This document shows, piece by piece, positions 26,001 through 48,763 of a DNA stretch of 64,000 bases (positions within the stretch are counted from its first letter, which is position 1; every line of letters begins with the position of its first letter). The notes under the pieces were generated by a model. The model was not told where the DNA came from, did not search any database, and was given only the letters and a program-made list of their open reading frames with translations. The position numbers and the translations under genes are program-made. Location: positions 62,001 through 126,000 of IMG/VR virus record IMGVR_UViG_3300024999_000030. One strand, 5' to 3'.

Positions 26001-29000
26001 TCTATCTGATGTTTGTCGTTTTGATAATAATATTCATTGTACTAATTACCCATATCCAATGTCACAATTTGAACAAACTTATCAGGGTGCCTTTACTCCT
26101 GCGGGCTGTGTTTACGATCAAACTACTGGTTCTTATAGTTCTTGTGTTAAAATGGACGGTATAATTGCTGCTGATGGAGCTTCACCAGTAGAAGCTGATC
26201 CAGATTTTATTTATCGTAAATCCGCAACGTCTAAAGTGAACAGTATTTGCTTAGAAACCTCTTGTAGGTTTTATAGCGCCTCTGGTAAACAAAAGGATTT
26301 TGCTGGTATTAACGGTCGGGGATTATATTATCAAAATTGCCGTAATTCTTTATGTCCAAATTATCAACCTATTTTATTGGGTAATAATGAAGAAATTCTC
26401 GCTAATTATAATTACGTAGTGGATAATATAGTTGTTGATTATGTCTATGGTGATAATGGTATAGACTGGAGCCCTAATTTATCAGCTTTACGTCAAACTG
26501 CGGGTAGATTTGGCATTGACACAGCAGGAGAAACATATTATGTTTCCTATAAATACGGAGCTAGGGAACCCGCTCTTTATAGTAATTTTGCTTATTTATT
26601 GGGAACAAGAGAGCTGGATGAAAGTTCTAGACGGTGGGCAAAAGAAACCTATAGAAAAGCTATTAGCGGAGTTATCGCTGCCTATCTTAAGGGTCCAACT
26701 TTATTTGGAATAGAAGAACTCGTCAAAACATTTACAGCTACCACACCTGAAATTAAAGAAGGAAACACTCTTGGTTGGCGTTTAGATATTGATCATTTAT
26801 ATAGTTTACCTGCGATATTTACTGGAACTACATTTTATAGTACCTCTACTCCAGTTACGGGCCAATCAGATCCATTTGGTAAGGGTCTTTGGATGCGGGA
26901 CAATAATGCCCTAACATATGATGCTGATGTTAATTTTAGAATTTCTGAAGGTGGGCTAGATTTATTTGTTGGTACAAATTGGTTGCGTAAAAATACATCA
27001 CCTGTTATTTTAGATTTATATCAAAATAATTCTAAAGGTTTACGTGGTGAAGCCATTATTACCGACACCTCAGTTAGTGCTGTGGGATTAGTATATGATC
27101 CTGATTCTGAATCAGCACAAATTTCGCATCAAGCAATTTGGGAAAATGTAATTGATGCCGGAGCAGTTGTATCTTGGAAATCTTTTAGTTTGGGTTCAGC
27201 TATCACCAACGGTAAGGTTAACGAATTTTCTGCAGTTGATGTTGATGTGTGGTTTTTACCCTGGAATGAAGCTGAGTATGGCAGCGAATATTGTGGTATT
27301 GTTGGGCAAGCGGACACTGAGTCTTATGCAACTTGGTATGGAGAAAATTATGGTTATCCAGAAATTGGTCCTCCTTATGCTAGAATTTCTTTAGAAACTT
27401 TTACTGGTACTGACGGTTATTTGTGTCCACATTTAAATATGGAATCGTGTGCTCAAAATACTCCACCAGCATATTGCTTAAACAAAGATTCTTCTGTATT
27501 GTATGTGACGGGTGAGAATGACGAAAACGCAACGATTACTATTGAAAAATTACAAAAAGCCGTTGGTCGTAGAGTCACAATTATTAATGGCGAGCAGGCA
27601 AATAGAAATTATTATGTGTTAGATTATGTTGCTGAAGACACAACGATTGGAAACACAACATATCATGTATATGGATTGCATTTAGATGGCATGTCAGCTA
27701 TGGATTATGCTGAAAACATTGAATACATTATTCACTCATCGCCTATTCAATCTTTATCTTTATCTTTACCTAATTCCAGACATTTACGCGTCAGAATGCA
27801 AATCTCAGTTAATCCATTAAGTGAAACTGGATATGGTGAATATTATAATGAATATCAAGGTTATGGAGAATATTACGGGGAAGTAGAAAATCTAAGTACG
27901 GCTAAACTTGGAATTACTGATATAGTGGTTACTTATAATAATCCAGTGTGTGCGGTTCCAAGTGCTAAAATTACGACTCTGTTTGATGTAAATCATGAAA
28001 ATAGTGGTCCATATAGTAATCGATTATCTATTTTCAAAGATACAGAAAATTTATTACATTTTAGATTATATGAACATGTGGAATTAAACAAAACATCAAT
28101 GTTGAAGCCAATGTCCAGTGGCATTTCTTCTGTGTTTATTTCAGAAGAGGGATGCAGATCTTATTATGAAGTTGTTTTAGATTTAGAAAAATTTGATTTT
28201 GATTTAATGTGGTCTCGTCGAACACGTCAATACATTGCTATGAGTTGGAAATTAAATGATGGAACGCAAACCTGCGCTCAGAAAGATAGTGAAATTCACG
28301 CTTTTATTAATGGCGCTGAAATTAGCACTCAACCAGAAGATGGACAAAGTTTACAAGATTGGATTGAAAATAGAGTGAGTTGGGTAAGAAGGGGAATTTT
28401 GTGTCCCGATGGAACATTAACAGAAACTGATATATTCAATTTATCTAAAAACAATGGGCTTGTTGATGTAGTGAGGGAGGATTCATTTATTCAAAGAGAT
28501 AGGTTTAATACTATAACGCTTTGTGATTCCCCTAAGTATGACACTACTGATATTTCTGTTTGGTTTAATGGTTGGAAAGAAGACACTACTGCCCAATGGG
28601 CACAAACAACTGTAACCCCTGAAAACATTAGTTACTATGGTAATAGACTTATGTTAGAAGCTGTAGATTTAAATAAATTGTGGCCATGCGCATTTATTCT
28701 CAATAGCTATCCATCGGCTGGAAATATTTATGGTGAACCGGTTTCTGGCGTATATACTTCTCAAATATATGATAGTACGATGTTGGGATTGGAGTGGACT
28801 AAATTAGCAATTAAAGCCTCTACATCAAGCCTTCAACGTCGAGGTTATATTATGAGAGATACCATTGGTTGTGGTATTAGTTTAGATGGCTGTACATCAG
28901 AATACTGTGATTATGGATATGATGCATATGGGTATGATGCATATGGCTCTAGCGCGCTTAAATCGTTATTTAAAATTATGTATCGCACTGCGGACTATTC

Positions 29001-29307
29001 TGATACATTGATAACAGAACCATGGATTGAATTAGATCTTATTAATAATATATCCAGTGAAGACGATGGATATGTTTACAGTGATTCAGTGTACGCTTAT
29101 GTTTTAAAATGTGATTGGACAGTAGATTATGAAGCCACATTATCTGGAGTTAACGGTAGATATATTCAATATCGCATAGAAATGTTAACAAATGGTAAGG
29201 ATTCACCGGTAATTTTTTCTGTAGATTTTAATAGTGTTAAAACTTTATTCAGCACTGATTTGAATTTTAATTTATCTGGTCAAGAACTCACGATGTCGTT
29301 AATATAA
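23011..29307 (+). CDS. Giant baseplate wedge/fibre-attachment protein (Ig-like N-terminus, gp7/gpI-like segment, LamG-like region, Cys-rich and Tyr-Gly motifs)
   Basis: Follows J. Ig-like start (VTAIALDELEAVFNQPV...NFVI); TYRKAISGVIAAYLKGPTLFGIEELVKTF resembles the gpI/gp7 helical segment; ends GRYIQYRIEML...SPVIFSV. Confidence 0.6.
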   Translation: MNKLPVKLIAVTAIALDELEAVFNQPVNPNLTNANFVISPLYGVGNLNIVSITQSLDSSVTIIIHTDTQIPFMLYRVVTSGVRALTSSAIIETNSVDNIAVFDGFATDSVILDRMIDSLSPMLANKTKIEPTTGQEVETFTSKLFRVVSDELSRIEDEIGKTEADYFIGVQVDSEAVTRGRGHYDKLNNIGANEITRVAKEKSSKAIIKSDTSSVFFDGDVQLITQSIMGSLTVSLTPSSGYLEVDALSPSLINASRFMLGFPAPQAGDKRYIRFVNAEEATITATPYVLEVQLGPILKVLAVMVQTGPVMAMYDLSSYALKTNFYDVGNAYVDVKLTDTQFKLSPVLGVPPPQAGDKVFVVYSYNNSTRKIQENLNVTAVVGLPPARVTNTTLPIIGTPDPNLDPVFNEIEMEQSSASGGAFFINNVGLLSYSGISNATSTNTSLVIMKKEVDVLIRIDHDLTLTELSDGRFVCLNPFQREVSWSVVRTLSWGEYMVNYRNTQSTSAQTEIAIAQFDAGSPNDTLLAARLTAFPQVIYVSYLRLATYEEDIDYSVILGNANVYANNPLMTGAIALPSSDSSQISEGQIVNIAYQYEDVFVEGRDYNLFANVEECYERVGSSMFIDEDGKFNIKTQHSPIEEVNKVFSEGTGIDYTVNHVYDDRIIVNEPISVENVIEVVTFKDVTDVIELKDVAGALSLSHAMLLNEAKTTIGGTVYDSVSLQKVDKIAIRTAYLSGTDGFLLQFQNKLISEGETADRFTGIDTTSVLYPFTIDPYLLTDAYLQNQGLFEDVFNKNDCINITTFVGINEEPTCFYGTIDSSVSFEPTVCVHDTGAVCDVTGTAFSPIDGYNVDANLYKSHCKSQSCFKYTSVFHKEVPFIDGKTEFYRRVIGEDGIPLVDKNGQYIFTRREAPGAYSIDYINGVVHVAIDSWAPVVGLQSQIVARYTTAALQARHQNVLNVNYVQKQAISSSAGQNIQKTALNYLKVDHIDNDTIYLSDVCRFDNNIHCTNYPYPMSQFEQTYQGAFTPAGCVYDQTTGSYSSCVKMDGIIAADGASPVEADPDFIYRKSATSKVNSICLETSCRFYSASGKQKDFAGINGRGLYYQNCRNSLCPNYQPILLGNNEEILANYNYVVDNIVVDYVYGDNGIDWSPNLSALRQTAGRFGIDTAGETYYVSYKYGAREPALYSNFAYLLGTRELDESSRRWAKETYRKAISGVIAAYLKGPTLFGIEELVKTFTATTPEIKEGNTLGWRLDIDHLYSLPAIFTGTTFYSTSTPVTGQSDPFGKGLWMRDNNALTYDADVNFRISEGGLDLFVGTNWLRKNTSPVILDLYQNNSKGLRGEAIITDTSVSAVGLVYDPDSESAQISHQAIWENVIDAGAVVSWKSFSLGSAITNGKVNEFSAVDVDVWFLPWNEAEYGSEYCGIVGQADTESYATWYGENYGYPEIGPPYARISLETFTGTDGYLCPHLNMESCAQNTPPAYCLNKDSSVLYVTGENDENATITIEKLQKAVGRRVTIINGEQANRNYYVLDYVAEDTTIGNTTYHVYGLHLDGMSAMDYAENIEYIIHSSPIQSLSLSLPNSRHLRVRMQISVNPLSETGYGEYYNEYQGYGEYYGEVENLSTAKLGITDIVVTYNNPVCAVPSAKITTLFDVNHENSGPYSNRLSIFKDTENLLHFRLYEHVELNKTSMLKPMSSGISSVFISEEGCRSYYEVVLDLEKFDFDLMWSRRTRQYIAMSWKLNDGTQTCAQKDSEIHAFINGAEISTQPEDGQSLQDWIENRVSWVRRGILCPDGTLTETDIFNLSKNNGLVDVVREDSFIQRDRFNTITLCDSPKYDTTDISVWFNGWKEDTTAQWAQTTVTPENISYYGNRLMLEAVDLNKLWPCAFILNSYPSAGNIYGEPVSGVYTSQIYDSTMLGLEWTKLAIKASTSSLQRRGYIMRDTIGCGISLDGCTSEYCDYGYDAYGYDAYGSSALKSLFKIMYRTADYSDTLITEPWIELDLINNISSEDDGYVYSDSVYAYVLKCDWTVDYEATLSGVNGRYIQYRIEMLTNGKDSPVIFSVDFNSVKTLFSTDLNFNLSGQELTMSLI
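27829..27882 (+). repeat. Imperfect 30-bp-period repeat encoding GYGEYYNEYQGYGEYYGE
   Basis: ggatatggtgaatattat ... ggttatggagaatattac. Confidence 0.7.
28912..28947 (+). repeat. 15-bp tandem repeat (about 2.4 copies) encoding YGYDA-YGYDA-YG
   Basis: tatggatatgatgca tatgggtatgatgca tatggc. Confidence 0.8.
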
Positions 29308-29320
29308 TGGATATGAAATA

Positions 29321-31207
29321 ATGTCAGATTACTTAGGTCCTCTCCAGAATCCACCCCCAGCCAGAAGTGATGGCATAGGTATAAAATTGTCTTCTGGTAA
29401 TGTTTTATTTGCTGGTGGGTGGGGAATAGATGGAACTTTAATATCTAGCTCTGTTATATATAATATCATAGACAATGGTTTTTATTCCGTTGGGGACCTT
29501 AACGTCTCACGCGCATATGGTCCTCCAGCAATTTTACTTGATGATGGAAACGTATTGGTGGTTGGTGGTTTGACTGGTTCCGATCCCACCTGGCTTAGCA
29601 CAGCATCTTGTGAATTATATAATCCAAATACTGGTCTTTGGACTTTTACTGGCTCCTTGTCTATATCAAGGCAATTTCACGCCATAGTTAAACTTATTGA
29701 TGGTAGGGTATTGGCCATAGGTGGTTCTACCACAGATGGTGGCGGAGGTAGTTTAGACACCTGTGAGATATATGATCCTATTTTGGGAACCTGGTCGCCT
29801 GCGGGCTCATTAAATATTTCTCGTGATGCTGTTGCAGCGGTGAGATTAGTGTCTGGTAAAATATTGGTAGCTAGCTGGAACGAAACCTCTAGTGAAACAT
29901 ATGATCCAGATACAGACACATGGTCAATTGTGGGAGATTTATCTTTACCGCCCCAAAATTCAATAAATTTAAATTTACTAAATAACAATACCGTATTATC
30001 TTCATGTACAGGAACAGACACTTGTGAATTATTTGATCCCAACTCTAACACGTGGTCTGTTACTGGTTCACTCTCTGCTGTGCGATTTTGGGGGGGGGCA
30101 GTTAAACTTTCTGATGGAAATGTTTTAGTTTTTGGGGGCACAACTACTTCAGACTTTACTGGAATTTTAGATTCAGCAGAAATATATAATGTGGCTAGCG
30201 GAACCTGGTCTTTAACAGGATCTATGAATGTTCCAAGAATGGAATTGGGACAAGTAGCCGCTAGCGTACAATATGCCCTTTTAGATGACAATACGGTATT
30301 GGTTTATGGTGGTTGGGGCGGACTTCCAGATGTTCTTCCACTTAGTACTGCAGAAATTTACTATCCTGATTTAGGTACATGGGGACTAGATTCTTATTCA
30401 CCTTGTCTTTCTCCGACTATTGACACACAACCATCAGGGGAAACTATTTCCCTTGGAGATACGGCAATTTTAACTGTGGTGGCGAGTGGCACGTTATCAT
30501 TGTCTTACCAATGGTACGAAGGCCTTAGTGGAGATACGTCAACTCCAGTCGGAACAGATTCAAACACATATACAACTCCAGCTTTAACCACAGAAACCAA
30601 CTATTGGGTAAGGGTTACTGGTCAATGTGATCCACCTGCTGATAGCACTACGGCAACTATAAGTATAAATTCGGAACCATATTTGACTATTATTTCTAAT
30701 GTTTTTGATGGTCCCCCTACTCTTCAAGCAACATGGCCCACTAAAACAATTGTTAATTGTGTGTGGGCGGCTAATGAAGAAATTATAGTTAGTACACCAA
30801 ACACGTTTTTAGTGCCCACTATAGATGCAACATATTCTGTAATTTTAACAGCCTCTGATAGCTCAGTGGGAATTCCAAATGATATTGATGTGACTGTTTC
30901 ATATGTTGATATGAATTTTGAATTAATTACATATAATTCTATTGCTAATGCCTCTAATATAAGTCGTTATGCTACTTTTATTTTTGATATTATAGAAACT
31001 CATGGAAAATATTTTCCACTATCATATGTTAATTTTTCTATATATCAAAATGGAGCCGTAATAGAAGATTTAACAAAAACTTCATCGGAAGTTTCTTATT
31101 CAGAAATATCTAATGGCTGGCGTTTTGTTATTAATGGCGGAGAGATTAAACATAGATTTAAATCTGGTTCCAATATTACAGTCACAATTAACGTTGCTAA
31201 TAATTAA
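29321..31207 (+). CDS. Kelch (7-blade) propeller + Ig-like domain + C-terminal anchor domain; candidate receptor-binding protein
   Basis: Seven Kelch-type blades (VLxxGG...EIYDP..GTW...GSL..R). Then PTIDTQP...SYQWYEG...YWVRVTGQC, an Ig-like domain. The C-terminal domain is shared with 33902..35470. Confidence 0.85.
   Translation: MSDYLGPLQNPPPARSDGIGIKLSSGNVLFAGGWGIDGTLISSSVIYNIIDNGFYSVGDLNVSRAYGPPAILLDDGNVLVVGGLTGSDPTWLSTASCELYNPNTGLWTFTGSLSISRQFHAIVKLIDGRVLAIGGSTTDGGGGSLDTCEIYDPILGTWSPAGSLNISRDAVAAVRLVSGKILVASWNETSSETYDPDTDTWSIVGDLSLPPQNSINLNLLNNNTVLSSCTGTDTCELFDPNSNTWSVTGSLSAVRFWGGAVKLSDGNVLVFGGTTTSDFTGILDSAEIYNVASGTWSLTGSMNVPRMELGQVAASVQYALLDDNTVLVYGGWGGLPDVLPLSTAEIYYPDLGTWGLDSYSPCLSPTIDTQPSGETISLGDTAILTVVASGTLSLSYQWYEGLSGDTSTPVGTDSNTYTTPALTTETNYWVRVTGQCDPPADSTTATISINSEPYLTIISNVFDGPPTLQATWPTKTIVNCVWAANEEIIVSTPNTFLVPTIDATYSVILTASDSSVGIPNDIDVTVSYVDMNFELITYNSIANASNISRYATFIFDIIETHGKYFPLSYVNFSIYQNGAVIEDLTKTSSEVSYSEISNGWRFVINGGEIKHRFKSGSNITVTINVANN
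30090..30098 (+). repeat. G9 homopolymer inside the Kelch gene
   Basis: ttt tgg ggg ggg gca; the longest G run seen in this AT-rich window. Confidence 0.9.
31097..31138 (+). repeat. 42-bp near-identical direct repeat, copy 1 (partner 35357..35398)
   Basis: tattcagaaatatc(t/c)aatgg(c/g)tggcgtttt(g/a)ttattaatggc; 3 mismatches. Confidence 0.85.
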
Positions 31208-31224
31208 AAAATAGGGAGATAGGC

Positions 31225-33888
31225 ATGTCAACGTGGTATATGGATTATGAAAATGGATTAGATGCTACTACCGCCACTCCATATGGATGGTGGAGCGTAG
31301 CGGTAACTGTCACTGGAGGTAGTAGTCCCGTCGCTGGTGACAAGATGACGGGACAAACCAGTGCCAAGGTAGCTTATCTCACAGTGACTCCTGGTGCGTG
31401 GGCTGGCGTAGTTACCTGCTATTTCTATGGGAGGAGTGGGACTTTCGTAGCAGAAAACGTCACCTACGGGAATGAAGGTGGTGGTCCTGGAACTGGTACT
31501 GGATCTATTGCTGGTGATTTGACTTACTGTGCTTGGAAAACCATAACCAACGGAGCCACAGCAGCTAGGATTGCTCCAGGAGACACCATTAGAATAGCAA
31601 AAAGCCTTGCTCCAATTTTAATTTCTGGGGGAGATTGTTCATGGACAGGTGTGACAAATGTTGGTGGAGTTGTTACCGGAACAAAAACTATTAATGCAGC
31701 TACCAATGCCTCTCCCATTGAAATAACAACTATTACAAATCATGGTTACATAACTGGAGACATAGTTCAAATTATAGGAAATACTGTTAATACAGCAGCA
31801 AATGGGGCTTGGGTAATAACCTATGTATCAGATACTAAATTTACACTTGATAATTCAGTGGGAAATGGGGTCGGTGGAGCCGGAACTTCTCGTTTAGTAA
31901 ATGTTAAAGCAGTAAAATTAACCACAGCCCAAACAACAACCATTGATAGATGTGAAGTTGCTTGGACTGTAGACAACACATCCACCGTAACCCGCACCGC
32001 AGTCACCACTCAAGCTAAAGAGGGTGGAGCCTGCATGAAAATTACTAAAGCCACTTATGCGATAAATACATTATATGCACATAAAACTATAACCTCTGTT
32101 GATTTATCCTCTAAGCAAAAAATAACTTTTTGGATTTACAATAGTGCAGCCACCCTAGCAACTCATTGGGTTATTAAATTATGTTCAGATACTGCTGGAG
32201 TCACTGCCGTCGATACGTTTACTCTTCCAGCAATTCCATCTATAAATGTGTGGGTTCCTTTAACTTTAACTAGAGATGGGGGTGGAAATCTTAGTGGAGC
32301 CGGAGGTGGACCAACTAACATTCAATCCATTGCTTTGTATACCGGATCAGTGGTTCCTACTGCGGCTTCATATCTTTATTTAGATAATTTTGAAGCAGCC
32401 ACCAGTACTGGTTTAAATCTCCAAAGCCTTATAAGTAAAAATTCGACAGAACAAGACGGAGATGAGGCTTGGTATGCCATACAAAGCATTAATGGGCGAG
32501 TTGTTTTATTAGAAACAGATCCGTCAACTAAACCAGATTCCATCATTGAGAGGGGTTATTCGGGAGACACAGAAATTGTTCCCACTTACACAAGGGAAAC
32601 TATTAAAACAACATTATCGACCAGTCTTACTGCTAGTGTTCAAGAAATACAGGAGAGTGGAACATCAGGAAATAATATTCAATATCAGGGGGGATATGAC
32701 ACTAATACCAACCTGCAAACTGGGGAAACATTTTTTGATGGATTAAATGGTTTAGGTCGAGGTCTTTTTTCAACAAGCAAAGATTATATAACTCTTAATT
32801 ATTTGAATTTTTATAGATATAATTATGGAACATATTTACTTAGCTGTGATTATTGGAATTTCCAAAACATTAACAACTGTAGTAATAATGGCTCTGGTGG
32901 AGGATATTGGAGTTCTTTTACAAATGGCATAGGCTCTCTTGGATTTTTCAATAATAATGGTGGGATAGGTTTAGATTTTAACAGTAGTAGTCAAGGTAAT
33001 TTATTCACTCTTTTAAAGGGTGTTAGTAATAATACTTCTTATGGTTTGATGATTAATGCATCAGATAATAATGATTTTTCATTAATATCTAATCTTAACA
33101 ATAATAGCTATGGTCTATATTCTATAAATAGTGCGGCTCGTAATAATATACACACTATTACAAATGCAAATTACAATAGTACGTCTGGAATATTTATACA
33201 AAGCATTACAGAGGACGTATTTAATACAATAACTCAAGCAAATTATAATGGACAATATGGTTTACAAATATCCACGGTTTCCCTTAATAATAAGGTTTAT
33301 TCTATTACCACAACTGGTAACGGCACCAATGGTATTTATGTTGCCGTTGGGCCAAATTATGTTTCCAATGCTCTTTGTGCAGAGGGCCTGCCAAGTGCCC
33401 CAATAACCACTGCACTTAATTATCGAGTTTATTTTCCAAAATGGGGGCAAGCAATAGATAGTCATTATTTCTTTACTGATGCGGCAATCGTGAATACTGT
33501 AACTACAGACCCAGAAAGACACACGGCCACTGGAATTGCTTGGAAAATGGCAATTACTGGATCATCTAGAAATAGTTGGTATCCCCTAAAACTTTCTATT
33601 GCTAAGGTGGCCGTACTAAATTCTGGATTAGTTACTGCTCGTGTGTGGGTTAAGAAAACCCATGCAACAAATATTTCTGCTAAATTGTTTATTCAGGGGA
33701 ATCAACTGTCGGGTGTTCCAGAAGATTTAATAGCCACTAAAGCAGACGATGTGAATTACGAAGAATTAACTTTAACTTTTACTCCTTCGGAAACTGGCGT
33801 TATCGAAATTGAATGTTGGGTATGGTCAAATACAGCTTCAATAGTTGATTCTGTATATGCAGACGACTTTACAGTAACGCAAGCGTAA
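31225..33888 (+). CDS. Tailspike/fibre-like protein with parallel beta-helix (about 8 Asn-rich 24-aa coils) and jelly-roll/CBM-like domains
   Basis: Contains INAATNASPIEITT..NHGY.TGD.VQI, a phage tail FCCH-like module. About 24-aa repeats end N..YG/SG/NG (e.g. TITNANYNSTSGIFI, TITQANYNGQYGLQI). C-terminal ARVWVKK...FTPSETGVIEIECW...YADDF is jelly-roll-like. Confidence 0.7.
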   Translation: MSTWYMDYENGLDATTATPYGWWSVAVTVTGGSSPVAGDKMTGQTSAKVAYLTVTPGAWAGVVTCYFYGRSGTFVAENVTYGNEGGGPGTGTGSIAGDLTYCAWKTITNGATAARIAPGDTIRIAKSLAPILISGGDCSWTGVTNVGGVVTGTKTINAATNASPIEITTITNHGYITGDIVQIIGNTVNTAANGAWVITYVSDTKFTLDNSVGNGVGGAGTSRLVNVKAVKLTTAQTTTIDRCEVAWTVDNTSTVTRTAVTTQAKEGGACMKITKATYAINTLYAHKTITSVDLSSKQKITFWIYNSAATLATHWVIKLCSDTAGVTAVDTFTLPAIPSINVWVPLTLTRDGGGNLSGAGGGPTNIQSIALYTGSVVPTAASYLYLDNFEAATSTGLNLQSLISKNSTEQDGDEAWYAIQSINGRVVLLETDPSTKPDSIIERGYSGDTEIVPTYTRETIKTTLSTSLTASVQEIQESGTSGNNIQYQGGYDTNTNLQTGETFFDGLNGLGRGLFSTSKDYITLNYLNFYRYNYGTYLLSCDYWNFQNINNCSNNGSGGGYWSSFTNGIGSLGFFNNNGGIGLDFNSSSQGNLFTLLKGVSNNTSYGLMINASDNNDFSLISNLNNNSYGLYSINSAARNNIHTITNANYNSTSGIFIQSITEDVFNTITQANYNGQYGLQISTVSLNNKVYSITTTGNGTNGIYVAVGPNYVSNALCAEGLPSAPITTALNYRVYFPKWGQAIDSHYFFTDAAIVNTVTTDPERHTATGIAWKMAITGSSRNSWYPLKLSIAKVAVLNSGLVTARVWVKKTHATNISAKLFIQGNQLSGVPEDLIATKADDVNYEELTLTFTPSETGVIEIECWVWSNTASIVDSVYADDFTVTQA

Positions 33889-33901
33889 ATGAGGTAATTG
33901 A

Positions 33902-35470
33902 ATGTCTCTGCCTGGTAGCAACGATTTAATTGGAATGGATTATGCCTTTGAAGCACAACCGTTTGTCCAAATTCCAGCCAAAGCAGAGGCAGGTCCATTA
34001 GATTTATCTTTTAACGCAGAACCCTTTTTACCAGCAAACTTACCAATTAATATATATGGCGATTCATCTGGCTGCACTAGCGTAGCTCTATCTACTGATG
34101 TATATGACGTTTATCGGTGGCAAACTTCTCCTGACAATTCCACTTGGTCTGATATTGTTTTGGCTACAAGTTCAACTTATTCAGTAGTCTCCACTGCTTA
34201 CTATAGGATTTCTGCCAGGGTTACAATTTCTGATCCGTGGCTTTATTCCAATGGATTGTTTGTAACTATTTATGTTGCCCCAATAATGGGTATAATTGGA
34301 GATTCCTCTGATTGTACGTCAGTCACTTTAACGGCAACTGGTTCTGACATTGTTACTTATCAATGGGCTAAAGATGGTAATCCTATTGGTGTAAATAGTG
34401 ATACATATGTTGCCACTGAAAGTGGATCATACACTGTGGCTGGAACCAATTCTAACGGTTGTTATGGAATCTCATCTACTCATGCGGTTGTCATTTATAG
34501 TTTTCCGACTATTTCTATTATTGGAGATGCTTCTGGTTGCGATTCTATATCTCTTTCTACGGCCTCTTCTGGTGTAAATTCTTATCAATGGAAATTAGAT
34601 GGAGTTATTATTAGTGGAGCGGAAAGCAGTACATATATAGCAACTGTAAGTGGTAATTATACTGTTGTCGGAACAAGTGTAAATTCATGCGCTATGGAAT
34701 CGAATAGTCACGCTGTAATTGTGTATGTTGCGCCATCCGCGCCGACAATCAATGTGTCTTTTTATACATTATCCGTACCAGATATTTACATTTCTTATCA
34801 GTGGCGCTTGGAAGGCGTTGATATTTTTAGTGCAACTACTTTTACATATTTAGCTGGATTACCTGGTAATTATTCGGTATTGGTGACCGATTCTAATGGA
34901 TGTTCTGTGATTTCTGAGGAAGTTTATCTTACTATGGATGCATATATTTCCATAACACCAGATTCATTGGGTCCAGCAACATTATCTGCATTATGGCCTG
35001 GTAAAACTATTGCTAGAACTTATTGGTTTTTAGATAATATTATGTTATTTGACACAACAGAAGAGTTATTTTTACCGACAGCTCCAGGATATTATAAAGC
35101 GGCAATGCAATCGATTGATAATTTTACAACTATGACGTCAAATATTTATGTTGCAAGTTCTTATGTTAATCAAGAGCCAGGATTAATATTAAATGGTTCA
35201 GTCTCAACTGGATCAATATTAAGTAGATATACTGATATTATGTTTGATGTAATAGATTCTACTGATAGGGCTATTCCTATTTCGTATATTAATTTCTTTG
35301 TATATCAGAATGGAGGTCTCTTAGAAACTCTTACTAAAGACTCCTCTTATGTGTCATATTCAGAAATATCCAATGGGTGGCGTTTTATTATTAATGGCCC
35401 TACCGTTAATCCCAAATATAGATTCAAAAATGGATCTGTCATAGAAGTAAAAGTTATGATAACCAATTGA
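33902..35470 (+). CDS. Tandem Ig/PKD-like repeat stalk protein with shared C-terminal anchor domain
   Basis: Repeats C.S(V/I)(T/S)L...YQW..DG..I.....Y.AT.SG.YTV....NGC. The C-terminal domain (~80 aa aligned by eye) is paralogous to that of 29321..31207. Confidence 0.75.
   Translation: MSLPGSNDLIGMDYAFEAQPFVQIPAKAEAGPLDLSFNAEPFLPANLPINIYGDSSGCTSVALSTDVYDVYRWQTSPDNSTWSDIVLATSSTYSVVSTAYYRISARVTISDPWLYSNGLFVTIYVAPIMGIIGDSSDCTSVTLTATGSDIVTYQWAKDGNPIGVNSDTYVATESGSYTVAGTNSNGCYGISSTHAVVIYSFPTISIIGDASGCDSISLSTASSGVNSYQWKLDGVIISGAESSTYIATVSGNYTVVGTSVNSCAMESNSHAVIVYVAPSAPTINVSFYTLSVPDIYISYQWRLEGVDIFSATTFTYLAGLPGNYSVLVTDSNGCSVISEEVYLTMDAYISITPDSLGPATLSALWPGKTIARTYWFLDNIMLFDTTEELFLPTAPGYYKAAMQSIDNFTTMTSNIYVASSYVNQEPGLILNGSVSTGSILSRYTDIMFDVIDSTDRAIPISYINFFVYQNGGLLETLTKDSSYVSYSEISNGWRFIINGPTVNPKYRFKNGSVIEVKVMITN
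35357..35398 (+). repeat. 42-bp near-identical direct repeat, copy 2 (partner 31097..31138)
   Basis: Encodes YSEISNGWRF(I/V)ING in both genes. Confidence 0.85.
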
Positions 35471-35477
35471 GGATAAT

Positions 35478-37358
35478 ATGGCTTTAGAAATTGTTTTTAC
35501 TTGGTCGGATAATCCAGAGTTTCGTTGTGTAACAGCTACTGCTACAGATGGATATAGTTCTTATTTATGGAACAATGGAGAAACTGACAGAATTATTACA
35601 ATTACGGAAGATGGTTTATATTATGTAACGGCTGATGCTGAAGAATCTCAACATTATTATATAGATATTAGCGCTAATATTATTAATTCAGAATTGTCTT
35701 TTTCTTTTTCCATTGAATCTATCAACTCTTTACCACCAGGTAAATATGTTTTTGAATATGATACCGGTTTAGATATTAAAATGAAAAAAACTGGTCGTTC
35801 TTTATATTTAGGATCATCTTCATCTCAAATGAAGTATGACTTAGCCCCTCATCTTGGAATTTCAAAACCAAAATATGATTCGGGATATACTTACGATTCG
35901 TATTATCCAGCCGATGCCATTCTCTTAGAGCAGCGTCTTTTGGATAAATCATTTAATAATGATTTGATTTCTAATTCTTTAGGTATTAGTCCAATTAAAA
36001 CTAATAATAGATTGGCTCCATTTATCGATTCAGGCAGACATAATCTTATGGTCGTTCATTTTGATGATTGTTTTGATAATTTTGCACCATTTTATCCATT
36101 ATATTCTGGTGTTTTCTTAGCAGACTCTTTGTTCGGTCAAGCAGGAGTGTTTAGTGGCACGCCCCTGATTGTTCCAAATGTGAAATATTTTAGTGCAACA
36201 ACTGGATCTATACAGTTATGGGCTAAAAGACTCTGTAAAACCAGAGGAACCAAATACTATATAGTTGACATGCAGCCTTTTGTCGGCTCTAATAATTTAG
36301 CTGCTTCTTTTTCCCTTTATATCGATGAGATTGATAATTTAACATTTGAAATTATAGGTTTTACTCCTATATCGGGAACAAATTCTGTACGTACAGATAA
36401 ATATGTAATTCATTGTCCTTTATCCACTAAAGATTTAAATGGCAATGAATATAATCATATAGCTATTACATGGAATAATTCCTCCTCCCCGACTGAAAAT
36501 TTCATGAGACTATATCTTAATGGAGAGTTGCGTAGTTTACTTAAATATGACACAGGCGCTACATTTGGTATTGACGAGGTTACAGCTGAAGAGAGATTGT
36601 TTGGAGATTATGCTGATTCTACATTTATTGGTGGAGATGCCCAAACCCACGAAGTGAAAGCTAGGGTTAATAAGTTTATTGTGGAAAAGTTAGGTGGTAT
36701 CGTAGATCCAAGCACGATTACGATAGGGAATCCCACAGGAAGTAAATTTTCAAGAACCATATCTGGTTTAGAGAGCTTCTTTAATCAATTTATTGATGGC
36801 GTGTCGTATCAAATAGCAACATATGAAAATGAAACATTTACAGTATCCAATCAGGTTTATGGTGGTACTTTTTATGATTGGTTGGGATTAATGAATGAGC
36901 AACCCACTCAAAAATATAATACTGAACCTACAGATTGGCTAGATACTGTTAAAAGTAAAGCTGCGGTAAAGGAAATTAGTGGACAATTTATTGACAATGC
37001 CTCTGATTTTACTCATATTTATATTGGGGAAGATATTAATGGTTTGTATCCTGGTCAAGTTCTCATTGATCAATTGGCCATTACGAATGCTCCGCTTTCA
37101 ACTGCAGAGGTGGCTGCTTTTAAACGTCAGCAACCTGTTTCAATAAGCGACAGTAGAGTAACACTTGGATATGATTTTAATATTGCCGCCATTGAAGCTA
37201 TGACATTTACTAATTTGCAGGACGAATATGGTCGTAATTTTGAGTTTATTGTTAACGTGCTAAATCCTTTCAGTTTTCCATTAGATAAGGCATTGATTAC
37301 AAATCTTATCTCAATGGTTAAACCAGCTAATAGTACGGCTTTTGTGAATTTTGCTTAA
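35478..37358 (+). CDS. LamG/concanavalin-like virion protein ending in a KPA-type wedge motif
   Basis: TGSIQLWAKR, YNHIAITWNN, MRLYLNGE and IDQLAITNAPLS are LamG pattern elements. C-terminus LITNLISMVKPANSTAFVNF. Confidence 0.65.
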   Translation: MALEIVFTWSDNPEFRCVTATATDGYSSYLWNNGETDRIITITEDGLYYVTADAEESQHYYIDISANIINSELSFSFSIESINSLPPGKYVFEYDTGLDIKMKKTGRSLYLGSSSSQMKYDLAPHLGISKPKYDSGYTYDSYYPADAILLEQRLLDKSFNNDLISNSLGISPIKTNNRLAPFIDSGRHNLMVVHFDDCFDNFAPFYPLYSGVFLADSLFGQAGVFSGTPLIVPNVKYFSATTGSIQLWAKRLCKTRGTKYYIVDMQPFVGSNNLAASFSLYIDEIDNLTFEIIGFTPISGTNSVRTDKYVIHCPLSTKDLNGNEYNHIAITWNNSSSPTENFMRLYLNGELRSLLKYDTGATFGIDEVTAEERLFGDYADSTFIGGDAQTHEVKARVNKFIVEKLGGIVDPSTITIGNPTGSKFSRTISGLESFFNQFIDGVSYQIATYENETFTVSNQVYGGTFYDWLGLMNEQPTQKYNTEPTDWLDTVKSKAAVKEISGQFIDNASDFTHIYIGEDINGLYPGQVLIDQLAITNAPLSTAEVAAFKRQQPVSISDSRVTLGYDFNIAAIEAMTFTNLQDEYGRNFEFIVNVLNPFSFPLDKALITNLISMVKPANSTAFVNFA

Positions 37359-37394: not shown

Positions 37395-40300
37395 ATGAGC
37401 GATACTGTATTGAAACCAACATTTTACAGCGGGCAGAATATATATCGAGATAATTTACAGAGAATTGTATCTTATGATTCCTCTAAACGCACGGCATTAA
37501 TTCTGTCTATGTTTAATAATGGCGTCGTAAATCCAACTCCATATGATTTGAGTGCTATGCGAGTTGTTGTTGATTCCTATCGCAACAATAGTTGTTATTT
37601 AGACTTTCAATCTTCATCTCAGGCTAATAATCCAATCACTATGTCAGCATCTGGCGATCCTCGTATTTTATATGCTCAAAAATTTTATGCTAGAAGTAAC
37701 AATATTCAAAAAGTTAGACTATGGATGTTAGTGGATGTACCCCCAGGCACACAGTTTGGTGAAATTTTTGTAGAAATTAGGGCTCTTGTTGGTTCCGATT
37801 GTACATCCAGCAATAGCTGTAATTGCAATTCAACATTACCCACCGGTGCCAGCCCCCTCATCACTGAACCAGCTTCTCAGGTTTTAGCTAGACGGGTGTT
37901 AGACCACAATACCATTAATAATTCTTTTCCGTATATTGATGTGAGTTTTGCCACAGAGCCACTTGTTTCTAATCTTGATGACAGATCTTTGATGATTCCT
38001 GGTCAATACTATGCTATTGTTATTGGGCGTAATTATTCTACAACCGGAACTTTACAAATTCATGGTAATTTTGGTAATAATCTAGCTAACTTAGAAAGCT
38101 ATGTTACTAAATTTGATCCAACAACCGGACTATGGACAAACTATGAAGGTGATTCAATAGCTTATCAAATTTTTTCTAATACTGTAGAGCTTCTCCCTGG
38201 GGATGGTATTGTTAGTGGTGCATCTATTAACAACCCAACGTACGTAGAAGACTCTGTTGGTAATACAGTGAGATATCATCTAGGAAACTTAGATTTAGCT
38301 CACGTTAAAAACATTGTGAGTGCTGGTGCTGTCGATCAGAATGGCGATGGGCGTAATATGGTTATTGCTCGTATTCGTGAAGTTGAAATGGAATATCAAC
38401 CTAATCCTAGAACGGGTAATCCAAATGCTACTGCAACGGCTGAGGTTATTGAGGCCTCTATTACCACTGAGAGGCTCTGGTCCGAAATGTCCAGTACCGA
38501 TCAAGCCGCTTGGTTGATATTAGCCTATGTTACCGATGAAAACACTAAAACAATTAAGGGATTATATGAACCACCCTGCGATATTAATGCTGCCGCAATT
38601 GCGGGTAATTGGTCTCCAGGTTTAATCAATATTGAAGACGCTAGGGTGTTTGTTCCTCACGCACAGGCCCTTAAATATAGCCTATTAGATGAGCCACCCG
38701 CTAGAGCCATTTCCACTTCTTATAACACTAATTTAATTATTCCTCAAGCTGATTCAACATTGGCATTAGCTTCAGTCTATATTAACACTGAGTCTGGGGC
38801 CCCGAGCAGTGTTTTTAAAACCGGATGTGTAGAGCGCAATCAATTGTCGGTTTTTGATAGTGCCTTTGGAATGACACTTACCACACCACATATGGGTAAG
38901 TATTTATATTATGCGGATGATGCGGGTACTCTTAAAAAATTAAATATCATTCCACCAATGGTTCAAAGTTCTATTGCTAGTGCCGACATTACCTCTGTTC
39001 CAAGGACATTAAATGCCTCTACAACCATTGGGGCCTGCGTGAACGCCAACATGGGTCTACGCGTTAGATTACAGTGGACACCTCCCTCGGACCCGACTTC
39101 TTATCGTGGGTTAGTTATTGTTAGGTCTACGGAAGACTATCCACGCTCTATCGACGATGGAGTAATTATTGCTGTATCTGAAAAAACATTTACTACTTTA
39201 GATGGACGAGTTTATAATTTTGATCCAGTCGGACAAGCAAATCCATGTTGTAATGCTGATAATCCAGAAGCGGGTATTATAGGAAAACGTCGTGGATTAA
39301 ATTCCCCACTTCCAGAATTATCTATGGAATTGGTTAGTGCGATGTCTGGTACTCTTAATAGTTTAAACGATATCGTAGAATATTCCATAATTCCTGGTAC
39401 GGAATTTAATATTAACGTGTCAGCCTTTAATCTTAGTTCCGCTATTCTTCATCCTCGTTTTGATGTTGATATTATATATGCGGGCGGTTCAATAAATCTT
39501 TTGAGGGATTATCAAGCAGTAAATGCTTCCACAATGTATGTGAGTTCTTCAGCTATTAATGATATTATTTTACCTGTTACAATTCCAACTACAATTAACA
39601 ATAGCTCTTTTCCAACCGGATATACATACTTAATGATTAGAGTATATGACGGATTTGTGTCAACTCATCCTCAAATTGGTACTCTTACATTAATTTTGAA
39701 AAATGAAACAGGTGAAAGTTTTAATTCTGGTCTTACTGCTATAGCTGCTCCACTATATGAAAACGACCAAGCTGTGGAAGATTATATTGCAGATTCAACA
39801 ACATTATTATCTGTTTCAGCAATGAGCTTTTTAAATATTTCAGCTATACCGTTTGGTAGATTATCACTTAAATCTCAATGGATGGCTAATTATTACAATG
39901 GCACTACCAATCAAATTGTACCCACAGATTCTATTAATTTAACTCCTTTAGAAACTGTAAATGGATCAGAAATTACAATGGAGACTTTGTTGGATTATGT
40001 TGGAGCTAATGCTTCTGTGGTTCCAGTTTCCATATCTTCTGACACATTTAGATTACAATTTATTGATATTGTTGGCAGTTCCATCGCCATAGGAAATAGC
40101 ACGACAGCCGCTCCTTCAGAATTATTTTTATCTGTTGTAGATGAAACTTCTGAGGCGGATATTAAACCAATTGTGGCATATTATAATCAGGATTTATATT
40201 TAGTTCCACGTCAACAGCTTGTTTTAAATCAAGAGTGCTCTTGCTATGTAGATGCTTACTCTGGAACGGCGTATTCTGCCGGTTTTGTCGGTTGTGAGCG

Positions 40301-40967
40301 GGGATACAATGCTGCAGCTTGTAATAACGGTATGTCCTATAATTTAATTTATTATTATACTGTTTTTACATATAACGATGCTGGACATTTTAGTTATGTT
40401 GACAGTTGCGCTCGCGCTGAATATGGTATTGGTAATGCTTTACCTCCTGGCCCAGTATGTCAACTTGCTATTGTTCCTCAAGCTAGTGGTAATCATGGCC
40501 CACTGTATGATAGCATCTCTTTATCGTGGGTAAATCCAGACGAATCTTCACTTTATGGAGTTAGAATTTACGTTTCTAAATATCGCTATGCTACAAACTT
40601 CGTAGAGCCATTCGATGCCAGCGATCCAATGTATATTTTATATGACTCCGTGTTTACCCCTAATTTAAATGCTATTGTTAATGTTGGTCCGGGTACAAGT
40701 TCAGCTATTATTGATGGGGTGGATAATTTTATAGCAGATCCCGACCATCCCGAACCCGATCCATATTATGGACACACTCAAGGTTATCGTGGTCTTTATA
40801 AGCTTTCTTCTGGCGGAGACGCTGTATTTACTGAATCCTCTACGTCTTCGGCGGTCCAATTTGAGAATGGAGTTATATATCATTATACTGTGTTCACATA
40901 TGATGTAAATGGCAATTACAATACCCCAACTTGTGTGGATAGGGGTCAAGTAAGCTATGCTTTATAA
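37395..40967 (+). CDS. Large virion structural protein with FN3-like domains (1190 aa)
   Basis: N-terminal KPTFYSGQNIYRDNL resembles the start of phage baseplate/fibre proteins. FN3-like strands LQWTPP, ISLSWVNP, YYYTVFTYND and YHYTVFTYDVNGNY. Confidence 0.6.
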   Translation: MSDTVLKPTFYSGQNIYRDNLQRIVSYDSSKRTALILSMFNNGVVNPTPYDLSAMRVVVDSYRNNSCYLDFQSSSQANNPITMSASGDPRILYAQKFYARSNNIQKVRLWMLVDVPPGTQFGEIFVEIRALVGSDCTSSNSCNCNSTLPTGASPLITEPASQVLARRVLDHNTINNSFPYIDVSFATEPLVSNLDDRSLMIPGQYYAIVIGRNYSTTGTLQIHGNFGNNLANLESYVTKFDPTTGLWTNYEGDSIAYQIFSNTVELLPGDGIVSGASINNPTYVEDSVGNTVRYHLGNLDLAHVKNIVSAGAVDQNGDGRNMVIARIREVEMEYQPNPRTGNPNATATAEVIEASITTERLWSEMSSTDQAAWLILAYVTDENTKTIKGLYEPPCDINAAAIAGNWSPGLINIEDARVFVPHAQALKYSLLDEPPARAISTSYNTNLIIPQADSTLALASVYINTESGAPSSVFKTGCVERNQLSVFDSAFGMTLTTPHMGKYLYYADDAGTLKKLNIIPPMVQSSIASADITSVPRTLNASTTIGACVNANMGLRVRLQWTPPSDPTSYRGLVIVRSTEDYPRSIDDGVIIAVSEKTFTTLDGRVYNFDPVGQANPCCNADNPEAGIIGKRRGLNSPLPELSMELVSAMSGTLNSLNDIVEYSIIPGTEFNINVSAFNLSSAILHPRFDVDIIYAGGSINLLRDYQAVNASTMYVSSSAINDIILPVTIPTTINNSSFPTGYTYLMIRVYDGFVSTHPQIGTLTLILKNETGESFNSGLTAIAAPLYENDQAVEDYIADSTTLLSVSAMSFLNISAIPFGRLSLKSQWMANYYNGTTNQIVPTDSINLTPLETVNGSEITMETLLDYVGANASVVPVSISSDTFRLQFIDIVGSSIAIGNSTTAAPSELFLSVVDETSEADIKPIVAYYNQDLYLVPRQQLVLNQECSCYVDAYSGTAYSAGFVGCERGYNAAACNNGMSYNLIYYYTVFTYNDAGHFSYVDSCARAEYGIGNALPPGPVCQLAIVPQASGNHGPLYDSISLSWVNPDESSLYGVRIYVSKYRYATNFVEPFDASDPMYILYDSVFTPNLNAIVNVGPGTSSAIIDGVDNFIADPDHPEPDPYYGHTQGYRGLYKLSSGGDAVFTESSTSSAVQFENGVIYHYTVFTYDVNGNYNTPTCVDRGQVSYAL

Positions 40968-46574: not shown

Positions 46575-46585
46575 GACGGCGAAAA

Positions 46586-47868: not shown

Positions 47869-47869
47869 C

Positions 47870-47898
47870 TTGCAATTTATCTCGATAGGTATTATATT
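47870..47898 (+). promoter_or_regulatory. Sigma70-like promoter TTGCAA-17-TATATT
   Basis: Exact 17-bp spacer; upstream of the GGAGGT RBS of the radical SAM gene. Confidence 0.6.
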
Positions 47899-47916
47899 AT
47901 TACCTTGGAGGTTAAT

Positions 47917-48726: not shown

Positions 48727-48727
48727 T
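48699..48727 (+). promoter_or_regulatory. Sigma70-like promoter TTGTAA-17-TATAAT upstream of gmd
   Basis: Consensus -10 with 17-bp spacing, overlapping the end of the radical SAM gene. Confidence 0.45.
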
Positions 48728-48763
48728 ATTGTGGTTATCTAACTTAAGAGGAAAGGAATTGAT

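What the first reader, a model, noticed from the sequence alone, without database searches (positions are those of the whole stretch)
29321..35470. Modular adhesins with different tips share one C-terminal anchor domain
Seen: the Kelch protein and the Ig-stalk protein end in paralogous domains (SNISRYATFIFDII...PLSYVNFSIYQNG...SYSEISNGWRFVING...RFKSGSNITV versus SILSRYTDIMFDVI...PISYINFFVYQNG...SYSEISNGWRFIING...RFKNGSVIEV). They share a 42-bp DNA repeat with 3 mismatches. Inference: this is a plug-in system in which any cargo fused to the tag docks on the virion. The anchor is C-terminal, the reverse of usual tail fibres. The repeat could also allow recombinational tip swapping or deletion of the 4.26 kb between copies.
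Basis: partly seen in the sequence, partly recalled or inferred. Interest (0 to 1): 0.72.

Follow-up and report, generated by a model that had tools for sequence, protein, structure and literature searches.

The report
Phage fibre proteins sharing one C-terminal foot
Two accessory tail-region proteins of a 333-kb groundwater jumbo phage end in the same rare two-domain beta-sandwich module. In relatives this module stands alone as a small protein, so it is probably the conserved "foot" onto which a Kelch propeller or an Ig stalk was added, much like the known capsid fibre Hoc.

Summary
ORF 29321-31207 (Kelch propeller + Ig + module) and ORF 33902-35470 (four Ig repeats + module) share a ~180-aa C-terminal module: 42% identity, E 1e-37. 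A 42-nt DNA stretch matches at 39/42, 4,260 bp apart.

The module is two Ig-like beta-sandwiches (AF2 pLDDT 85). The last ~95-aa domain matches no Pfam, PHROG, NCBIfam or PDB family. Among 1.84 billion representative proteins it occurs only in about ten proteins of one jumbo-phage clade, always as the extreme C-terminus.

In relatives the first copy sits in the same place, directly after the 2,098-aa giant protein, as a stand-alone 175-183-aa protein. In one lineage it is a pseudogene. The second copy always precedes the 626-aa protein and carries 2 to 6 Ig repeats. A distant member carries a Rax2-type propeller. Conservation rises towards the C-terminus.

This supports a conserved C-terminal foot with variable N-terminal cargo, the logic already described for T4 Hoc. 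Docking itself is inferred: the one co-fold gave no verdict. "Any cargo" overstates the case.

The DNA repeat follows from an identical peptide plus AT-biased codons (scan-corrected p about 0.2). It is absent in a relative, and contigs from four runs show no deletion junction. Modest interest: a new variant of a known kind.

The parts
23011..29307 (+). Giant 2,098-aa structural protein. Its last ~200 aa form a domain conserved in all relatives. The A-type module gene always follows it directly.
   Evidence: ORF. No Pfam/PHROG match. Homologues at 58-84% identity lie directly upstream of the A-type module in L003, L004/5, L007, L011 and L014.
29321..30385 (+). Kelch beta-propeller (residues 1-355 of the 628-aa protein), the N-terminal cargo. 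It starts at the first residues, with no N-terminal anchor segment.
   Evidence: Kelch_1 8e-25, Kelch_6 5e-24. About 35% identity to many cellular Kelch proteins, no close donor. No paralogue in the genome.
30413..30664 (+). Ig_7 (CHU_C-associated type) Ig-like linker domain, residues 365-448.
   Evidence: PF19081 6e-8.
30665..30928 (+). A-type module, domain 1 (Ig-like), residues 449-536.
   Evidence: Alignments. AF2 model. This half resembles common Ig repeats of many proteins.
30929..31207 (+). A-type module, domain 2 (the conserved terminal ~92-aa beta-sandwich, the actual shared 'foot') plus stop codon.
   Evidence: 52% identical to the B copy and 53-79% to orthologues, the most conserved segment. 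No family match.
31097..31138 (+). Copy 1 of the 42-nt DNA repeat (codes YSEISNGWRFVING).
   Evidence: Codon test.
31225..33888 (+). 887-aa right-handed beta-helix, tailspike-like protein between the two module genes. This is the hypervariable slot of the locus.
   Evidence: Relatives carry Beta_helix/NosD. 43-55% identity with large indels to the 1,192-aa protein of L003, and replaced by an unrelated ~600-aa protein in L004/L011/L014.
33902..34057 (+). N-terminal 52 residues of the 522-aa protein. Conserved only in the closest relative.
   Evidence: 75% identity to L003, no match in L011 or L015.
34058..34909 (+). Stalk of four ~75-aa Ig/PKD-like repeats (residues 53-336).
   Evidence: DNA repeat families with 213-228-nt spacing. 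PKD_3 and Hoc-like/tail PHROG matches. Repeat number is 2 to 6 in relatives.
34910..35173 (+). B-type module, domain 1 (Ig-like), residues 337-424.
35174..35470 (+). B-type module, domain 2 (terminal beta-sandwich) plus stop codon.
   Evidence: 60-74% identity to orthologues against 33-64% for the stalk.
35357..35398 (+). Copy 2 of the 42-nt DNA repeat.
35478..37358 (+). 626-aa protein with a ConA-like (Laminin_G_3) domain. The B-type module gene always precedes it directly.
   Evidence: Homologues at 42-87% identity lie directly downstream of the B-type gene in L003, L008 and L011.
37395..40967 (+). Conserved 1,190-aa structural protein closing the fibre block.
   Evidence: 76-88% identity in L003 and L011.
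19457..22989 (+). Baseplate context: gp25-like sheath initiator (158 aa) and gp6/Baseplate_J-like wedge protein (1,018 aa) just upstream.
   Evidence: phrog_43/2669 and PF10934. phrog_6 2e-33 and PF04865 2e-14.

Best explanation
The window is the baseplate and fibre block of a 333-kb contractile-tailed jumbo phage from groundwater. Two accessory proteins of this block are built on one rare ~180-aa C-terminal module. The module has an Ig-like domain (d1) followed by a family-specific terminal ~95-aa beta-sandwich (d2). The module is the ancestral, self-sufficient unit: in relatives the first copy is a stand-alone ~180-aa protein. It most likely holds the protein on the virion, probably on a conserved neighbour in the tail or baseplate. 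Candidates are the C-terminal domain of the 2,098-aa protein for the A copy and the 626-aa protein for the B copy. N-terminal parts were added in front of it and project outwards as weak, glycan-type adhesins. In this phage they are a Kelch propeller plus one Ig domain on A and four Ig repeats on B. The layout therefore works like Hoc: a conserved C-terminal foot with variable N-terminal display. Shown: homology, domain layout, synteny, the cargo-less and pseudogene forms, the conservation gradient, and the strictly terminal position of d2. Inferred: virion association, the docking role, the partner, and adhesin function. The 42-nt DNA repeat is a by-product of an identical peptide in an AT-rich genome.
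For: Homology of the two ends. Only two copies in the genome. In relatives L003, L004/5/6+L014 and L007 the gene directly after the 2,098-aa homologue is the module alone, 175-183 aa. The exact Kelch fusion is recorded on 17 contigs, and the assemblies compared are identical over the region. B-type proteins carry 2, 4, 4 and 6 Ig repeats. The distant member P0024 has a Rax2-type propeller + Ig + module in a syntenic locus. Identity to orthologues rises from the N-terminus (75%/none/none) through the stalk (64/42/33%) and d1 (66/46/47%) to d2 (74/63/60%). In 1.84e9 representatives d2 is found only in this clade and only as the last domain, whereas d1 alone matches common Ig repeats. The AF2 model has pLDDT 85 and shows two beta-sandwiches. 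The baseplate context is clear. No terminators or other signals separate the genes. The Hoc precedent is a conserved C-terminal binding domain plus a variable Ig string, with paralogues of different length in one genome (PMC10385173).
Against: There is no direct evidence that either protein is in the virion or that the module binds anything. Fold searches give only generic tandem Ig/FN3 matches. The A copy is a pseudogene in L011/L012, so it is dispensable, and its role could be other than structural. The N-terminal 52 aa of the B protein are as conserved as the module in the closest relative. Beta-sandwich domains at C-termini of phage fibres are often ligand-binding tips. The sample is small, about five lineages.
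Confidence: 0.5

Rival explanations
1. The module is the distal, host-binding end: a small lectin- or adhesin-like tip. Attachment to the virion is through other parts. These would be the N-terminal peptide of the B protein, or d1 in the stand-alone form.
For: C-terminal beta-sandwich tips are the rule in phage fibres (general knowledge). Fold neighbours include CBM- and FN3-bearing glycoside hydrolases. The N-terminal 52 aa of the B protein are 75% conserved in L003.
Against: The N-terminus is unrelated in L011 and L015 while the module is kept. The Kelch protein starts with propeller blades and has no N-terminal anchor segment. The stand-alone form has nothing but the module. d2 is the most conserved segment, and the A and B copies keep 52% identity, whereas receptor tips are normally the most variable part.
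Confidence: 0.2
2. They are Hoc-like capsid decoration fibres: the module docks on capsomers rather than on the tail.
For: The Ig stalk matches Hoc-like PHROGs 2973 and 4069. RB49 Hoc Ig domains are among the fold matches, Z 8.0. The layout is the same as Hoc (PMC10385173).
Against: The matches concern only generic Ig domains. The module alone hits no Hoc family and no PDB chain of Hoc. The Hoc binding domain is a four-stranded sheet plus a three-helix bundle, whereas d2 is all-beta. The genes sit inside the baseplate/fibre block, each tightly next to a conserved fibre-block gene.
Confidence: 0.12
3. The module is a non-structural assembly factor, a tail-fibre chaperone-like protein encoded right after the fibre it helps to fold.
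For: A small gene directly downstream of a giant fibre-like gene is the usual place of fibre assembly chaperones (general knowledge). It is dispensable in one lineage.
Against: It is fused in frame to Kelch, Rax2-type propeller or Ig stalks, which are surface-type domains. It has a tandem Ig fold. It matches no chaperone family.
Confidence: 0.08
4. The 42-nt repeat is a functional recombination site for swapping tips or deleting the 4.26 kb between the copies.
For: The copies are direct, in the same codon phase and 4,260 bp apart, so a crossover would give an in-frame chimera.
Against: The longest exact run is 14 nt. Codon identity is within expectation. In L003 the best A-versus-B 42-mer is only 35/42 and lies at another place. 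Contigs of four runs and a second IMG/VR record show no junction. The deletion would also remove the tailspike-like gene.
Confidence: 0.03

Closest known systems
T4 Hoc and Hoc-like decoration fibres (PMC10385173)
   Same: A conserved C-terminal virion-binding domain carries a variable N-terminal string of Ig-like domains. The number of Ig domains varies. Some phages encode two paralogues of different length. The authors already noted that the binding domain can display other ligands.
   Different: There is no sequence or fold relation between d2 and the Hoc binding domain: all-beta versus sheet plus three-helix bundle. The genes lie in the baseplate/fibre block, not with head genes. One copy exists cargo-less. 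One cargo is a full Kelch propeller. Binding and its target are unproven here.
T5 pb10 decoration protein (PMC5292684)
   Same: A two-part decoration protein: one capsid-anchoring domain plus an exposed Ig-like domain.
   Different: Its anchor is N-terminal and its Ig domain C-terminal, the opposite polarity. It is unrelated in sequence.
Classic tail fibres and tailspikes with N-terminal docking modules (T4 gp12/gp37, P22 tailspike, branched tailspikes of CBA120/G7C; from general knowledge)
   Same: A modular design: a conserved docking part plus an exchangeable host-facing part, encoded after the baseplate genes.
   Different: In these the conserved docking part is N-terminal and the variable part C-terminal. 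Here conservation rises towards the C-terminus, and the N-terminus is variable or absent.
Type IX secretion C-terminal domains (Ig-like sorting tags on diverse cargos)
   Same: A ~90-aa Ig-like C-terminal tag follows very diverse beta-rich cargos, including Kelch, propellers and CHU_C-associated Ig domains. T9SS CTD structures appear among fold matches to d1.
   Different: No match to the CTD models in Pfam or NCBIfam. No N-terminal signal peptide in any member (sequences). The fold matches are to d1, not to the terminal d2.
Accessory carbohydrate-binding modules on siphophage baseplates (evolved Dit, Tal extensions, BppA; PMC9128512 abstract, and general knowledge)
   Same: Non-essential adhesin-type domains added to tail-tip structures, present or absent between close relatives.
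   Different: Those are insertions or extensions within core baseplate proteins. Here separate small proteins are built on a dedicated module.

Membership tests
Hoc (highly immunogenic outer capsid protein) family | C-terminal domain homologous to the T4 Hoc capsid-binding domain (residues 281-376) | tested here: not met
   A profile of the module against all PDB chains at E up to 10 lists no Hoc chain. The module alone hits no PHROG at E up to 1. Hoc-like PHROG hits of the 522-aa protein cover only Ig residues 166-282.
Hoc (highly immunogenic outer capsid protein) family | Fold of the binding domain: four-stranded beta-sheet with a three-helix bundle | tested here: not met
   The AF2 model (pLDDT 85) is all-beta apart from one 3-residue helix. 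The Hoc fold is as described in PMC10385173.
Hoc (highly immunogenic outer capsid protein) family | N-terminal string of Ig-like domains | tested here: met
   Four ~75-aa Ig/PKD-like repeats in the 522-aa protein.
Hoc (highly immunogenic outer capsid protein) family | Binds the centre of major-capsid-protein hexamers | not testable with these tools
   No virion structure or binding assay is available.
Kelch-repeat beta-propeller | Several Kelch motifs above the Pfam gathering score | tested here: met
   Kelch_1 86 bits (cut-off 20.1), Kelch_6 84 bits (cut-off 25.3), residues ~1-355 of the 628-aa protein.
Type IX secretion substrates (CTD-tagged) | C-terminal domain matching Por_Secre_tail or CHU_C type models | tested here: not met
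   No such hit in Pfam at E up to 1 or NCBIfam at E up to 0.1.
Type IX secretion substrates (CTD-tagged) | N-terminal Sec signal peptide | tested here: not met
   By inspection, no member starts with a hydrophobic signal segment. No predictor was run.
Tail fibre/tailspike with N-terminal virion anchor | Conserved N-terminal docking segment with a variable C-terminal part | tested here: not met
   The N-terminal 52 aa of the B protein have no counterpart in L011 or L015. The Kelch protein has no N-terminal segment. Identity rises towards the C-terminus.
Tail-fibre assembly chaperones | Match to a known chaperone family (Tfa, gp38, gp57-type) | tested here: not met
   No Pfam, PHROG or NCBIfam match of the stand-alone module. 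Absence of a match does not exclude an unknown chaperone type.
Contractile-tail baseplate gene block | Neighbouring tube initiator, sheath initiator (gp25-like) and Baseplate_J (gp6-like) genes on the same strand | tested here: met
   PF23980, PF10934/phrog_43, and PF04865/phrog_6 at 3601-4260, 19457-19933 and 19933-22989.

The most novel reading that the evidence does not exclude
The terminal ~95-aa domain is a dedicated, portable docking tag for the tail or baseplate of a jumbo-phage clade. It would be a tail-side counterpart of the Hoc capsid-binding domain, unrelated to it in fold. Two diverged copies would each recognise their own conserved neighbour. Whole folded domains (Kelch or Rax2-type propellers, Ig stalks) placed in front of it would be displayed on the particle.
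Probability: 0.35. Interest if true: 0.55.

Novelty: new variant of a known kind. Interest (0 to 1): 0.4.

Why it matters
If the module is a docking foot, it is a second, independently evolved case of Hoc logic: a conserved C-terminal anchor with variable N-terminal display. Here it sits in the tail region of a huge phage, and the cargo-less ancestor is still visible in relatives. That makes the steps of domain accretion on phage appendages unusually readable. It also defines a new small domain family absent from Pfam and PHROGs. It could serve as a display handle, but the clade is uncultivated. The family is tiny and the concept has precedent, so the general impact is modest.

Tried and rejected
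1. Co-fold of the last 259 aa of the 2,098-aa protein with the A-type module, using my own shallow alignments: no verdict (score 0.07 against a mark of 0.32). It is neither support nor evidence against binding.

2. First AF2 run with four sequences: pLDDT 57, unusable. The nine-sequence run was used instead.

3. Fold searches in PDB, BFVD, a wide VIA search, AFDB clusters and the ESM Atlas returned only generic tandem Ig/FN3 matches and no informative family.

4. Host inference from the 887-aa protein. Its only phage-collection hit is Methanosarcina virus MetMV. However, the family has more than 368 metagenomic members, including bacterial MAGs, so I make no host call. Searches of the genome for PCNA, family B polymerase, MCM and sigma-70 found nothing.

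5. Foreign origin of the Kelch cargo from composition. Overall GC differs (0.41-0.44 against 0.30), but GC3 of the cargo (0.27) is like that of neighbouring genes. The difference lies in amino-acid composition, so I make no claim.

6. A tree to show that A and B are old paralogues was unresolved with 10 short rows. The A/B assignment rests on synteny only.

7. Hits P0012 and P0022 to part of d2 are low-complexity repeat artefacts.

8. Scans of genome contigs with the module and with the 887-aa protein found nothing.

9. Promoter and terminator scans were not above shuffles, and there was no Rfam match in 22-42 kb.

10. The T9SS-tag reading is rejected.

11. The read test for the deletion could only use assembled contigs, which cannot show rare variants.
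Full report
**Context.** The window is bases 62,001-126,000 of a 332,730-bp IMG/VR virus record rated complete. The record comes from groundwater metagenomes. Every long ORF lies on the + strand. Upstream of the finding are these genes:
- a tape-measure end with a peptidase domain
- a tube-initiator-like protein
- a gp25-like sheath initiator (19457-19933)
- a gp6/Baseplate_J-like wedge protein (19933-22989)

After these come six tightly spaced genes: 2,098 aa, 628 aa, 887 aa, 522 aa, 626 aa and 1,190 aa. Intergenic gaps are 7-36 nt. No terminator or promoter signal rises above shuffles. The finding therefore lies in the baseplate and fibre block of a contractile-tailed jumbo phage.

**The observation.** The 628-aa protein has a Kelch propeller (residues ~1-355), one Ig_7 domain (365-448) and a C-terminal ~180 aa. 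The 522-aa protein has 52 N-terminal residues, four ~75-aa Ig/PKD-like repeats and a C-terminal ~186 aa. The two C-terminal regions align at 42% identity over 186 columns, E 1e-37.

The DNA repeat is real. Positions 31097-31138 and 35357-35398 match at 39/42. The copies are 4,260 bp apart and in the same codon phase. It codes for a peptide identical at 13 of 14 residues. Given the local AT-biased codon usage, 7.0 identical codons are expected and 10 are seen (p 0.05; 0.22 after allowing for a scan along the module). The longest exact run is 14 nt. So the protein homology is highly significant, and the DNA repeat is its by-product.

**What the module is.** With nine family members as the alignment, AlphaFold gives a confident model (pLDDT 85). 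It shows two beta-sandwich domains joined by a linker. Fold searches return only generic tandem Ig/FN3 proteins: Fc receptors, titin Z1Z2, SiiE, Hoc Ig domains and FN3 pairs of glycoside hydrolases. TM-scores are low because the inter-domain angle differs. Pfam, PHROGs, NCBIfam and a PDB sequence-profile search give nothing for the module beyond a weak PKD-like signal in its first half.

An exhaustive profile search of 1.84 billion representative proteins found 23 hits. Re-scoring them shows three groups:
- Most match only the first domain (d1), a common Ig repeat.
- Three (P0012, P0022 and P0026) give only marginal fragment matches inside the second domain. P0012 and P0022 are low-complexity repeat artefacts.
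- The second domain (d2, the last ~95 aa) is matched only by members of this family. In every full-length member it is the last domain, in single copy.

The 333-kb genome has exactly two copies.

**Relatives.** Contigs were recovered by exact look-up and by pattern scans. They show a conserved locus. The table compares it across lineages.

| Lineage | Gene directly after the 2,098-aa homologue (A slot) | Following gene | B-type protein, directly before the 626-aa homologue |
|---|---|---|---|
| Window (also L010, and own record L013) | 628 aa: Kelch + Ig + module | 887-aa beta-helix protein | 522 aa, 4 Ig repeats |
| L003 (173-kb contig) | 182 aa, module alone | 1,192-aa homologue, 43-55% identical with large insertions | 674 aa, 6 Ig repeats |
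| L004/5/6, L014 | 181-183 aa, module alone | unrelated ~600-aa protein | not on the contig |
| L007 | 175 aa, module alone | no match to window proteins | not on the contig |
| L011/L012 | pseudogene | unrelated ~600-aa protein | 532 aa, 4 Ig repeats |
| L015 | not on the contig | not on the contig | 358 aa, 2 Ig repeats |
| L008 | not on the contig | not on the contig | 153 aa, diverged module |

Supporting details:
- The 2,098-aa homologues are 58-84% identical to the window protein.
- The L011/L012 pseudogene has an internal deletion and a frameshift.
- Only the window's lineage carries Kelch + Ig in front of the A copy. This exact protein is recorded on 17 contigs. L010 is 100% identical to the window over 20.5 kb, and contigs of four runs are identical over 30400-36200.
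- The 626-aa homologues next to the B copy are 42-87% identical.
- The upstream end of the 153-aa form in L008 is ambiguous.

One distant member, P0024 (701 aa), has a Rax2/DUF5122-type propeller, Ig repeats and the module. It lies in a locus with the same order: giant protein, small protein, module protein, two large proteins, glycosyltransferase. Its DNA could not be fetched.

**Conservation gradient.** The table gives identity of the 522-aa protein's segments to its orthologues.

| Segment | L003 | L011 | L015 |
|---|---|---|---|
| N-terminal 52 aa | 75% | no match | no match |
| Ig stalk | 64% | 42% | 33% |
| d1 | 66% | 46% | 47% |
| d2 | 74% | 63% | 60% |

For the A copy, d2 is 79, 53 and 61% identical to its orthologues, and d1 is 70, 47 and 41%. 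Between the A and B copies in the window, d2 is 52% identical and d1 32%. The conserved unit is therefore the terminal domain.

**Interpretation.** A protein that is nothing but the module must carry its essential interaction in the module. Cargo is added only at its N-terminus, and repeat number and cargo type vary. The module is the most conserved part and is always terminal. In phage appendages the conserved end is normally the end held by the virion, and the variable end faces the host. I therefore read the module, and chiefly d2, as a C-terminal foot. The Kelch propeller and Ig stalks would be displayed, accessory adhesin-type parts.

The strict adjacency of the A copy to the 2,098-aa gene, and of the B copy to the 626-aa gene, suggests paralogue-specific partners. 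This is inference from gene order only. One co-fold, of the 2,098-aa C-terminus with module A, gave no verdict and counts neither way. The pseudogene in L011/L012 shows that the A copy is dispensable, as expected of an accessory decoration. Virion association itself is not shown.

**Comparison with what is known.** The layout has a clear precedent. [quoted passage not shown] Hoc relatives differ in Ig number. Some phages encode two Hoc paralogues of different length, and use of the binding domain to display other ligands has been noted (PMC10385173). The present module is not a Hoc family member. It has no sequence match to Hoc. The Hoc binding domain is a four-stranded sheet with a three-helix bundle, whereas d2 is all-beta. 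The genes also lie in the baseplate block. It thus works like Hoc, probably on another part of the particle, using an unrelated domain.

A type IX secretion tag was considered, because Ig_7 domains and Ig-like C-terminal tags go together in Bacteroidota. I rejected it: no CTD model matches and no member has a signal peptide (and the sequences). A chaperone role and a distal-tip role remain as rivals with lower weight.

**The recombination idea.** A crossover between the repeats would give an in-frame chimera and delete the tailspike-like gene and the Ig stalk. Nothing supports this:
- The identity is within codon-bias expectation.
- In L003 the best A-versus-B 42-mer is only 35/42 and lies at another position.
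- The second IMG/VR record is 100% identical and colinear over 20.5 kb.
- Contigs from four runs span the region without any junction.

Contigs cannot exclude rare variants. Raw reads would be needed for that.

**Verdict.** This is a small, previously unnamed domain family confined to one clade of groundwater jumbo phages. It shows stepwise N-terminal accretion of adhesin-type domains onto a conserved C-terminal module. It is a new variant of a known design, not a new kind of system. The 'any cargo' and 'recombination cassette' claims are not supported.

Noticed in passing
window 40992-49738: Directly after the fibre genes lies a sugar-modification cluster. It holds a GT1/GT4 glycosyltransferase (639 aa), a GT-like protein (359 aa), two GT2 enzymes, four SAM methyltransferases, a radical SAM/SPASM enzyme and a GDP-mannose 4,6-dehydratase. 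It may glycosylate virion proteins or alter the host surface. The GT after the fibre block is conserved in L003, L011 and the P0024 contig.
   Followed up: partly
window 49800-51104: A tubulin/TubZ-like protein (Tubulin domain 7e-13, TubZ-like C-terminal domain 3e-6). The same kind of protein is used by some jumbo phages to position replication.
   Followed up: no
window 31225-33888: The 887-aa beta-helix tailspike-like protein has a single hit among 50,697 phage records: Methanosarcina virus MetMV AZF89914.1, 37.6% identity over 81%, E 2e-108. Its family has more than 368 metagenomic members, including bacterial MAGs, so this says little about the host.
   Followed up: partly
L011 951-1369 (same in L012): The A-type module is a pseudogene here. 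A 91-aa ORF has an internal deletion that joins d1 to d2, followed by a frameshifted 44-aa ORF holding the end of d2.
   Followed up: yes
L011 61-936: The giant-protein homologue carries RCC1-like propeller repeats just before its conserved C-terminal domain. The giant protein therefore also swaps internal beta-propeller modules between lineages.
   Followed up: no
L011 3208-3474 and L015 64-342: A short degenerate ORF upstream of the B-type gene repeats the first ~30 residues of that gene. It looks like a remnant of a duplication or replacement at the 5' end.
   Followed up: no
L003 13948-17470: The homologue of the 1,190-aa protein is called as two overlapping genes (135 + 1,043 aa), which suggests a frameshift or assembly error in that contig.
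   Followed up: no
L011 5243-8239: The homologue of the 626-aa protein is 998 aa long. It has ~370 extra N-terminal residues, and the remaining 625 aa are 77% identical.
   Followed up: no
window 15103-17619: An 838-aa protein with at least three PKD domains (PKD_4 1e-35), located between the tail-tube and baseplate genes. It is another Ig-decorated structural protein of this phage.
   Followed up: no
window 30665-31204 and 34910-35467: Both module segments have unusually low GC (0.30 and 0.32; GC3 0.15 and 0.19) against 0.38 for the genome and 0.41-0.44 for the Kelch and Ig parts fused to module A.
   Followed up: partly
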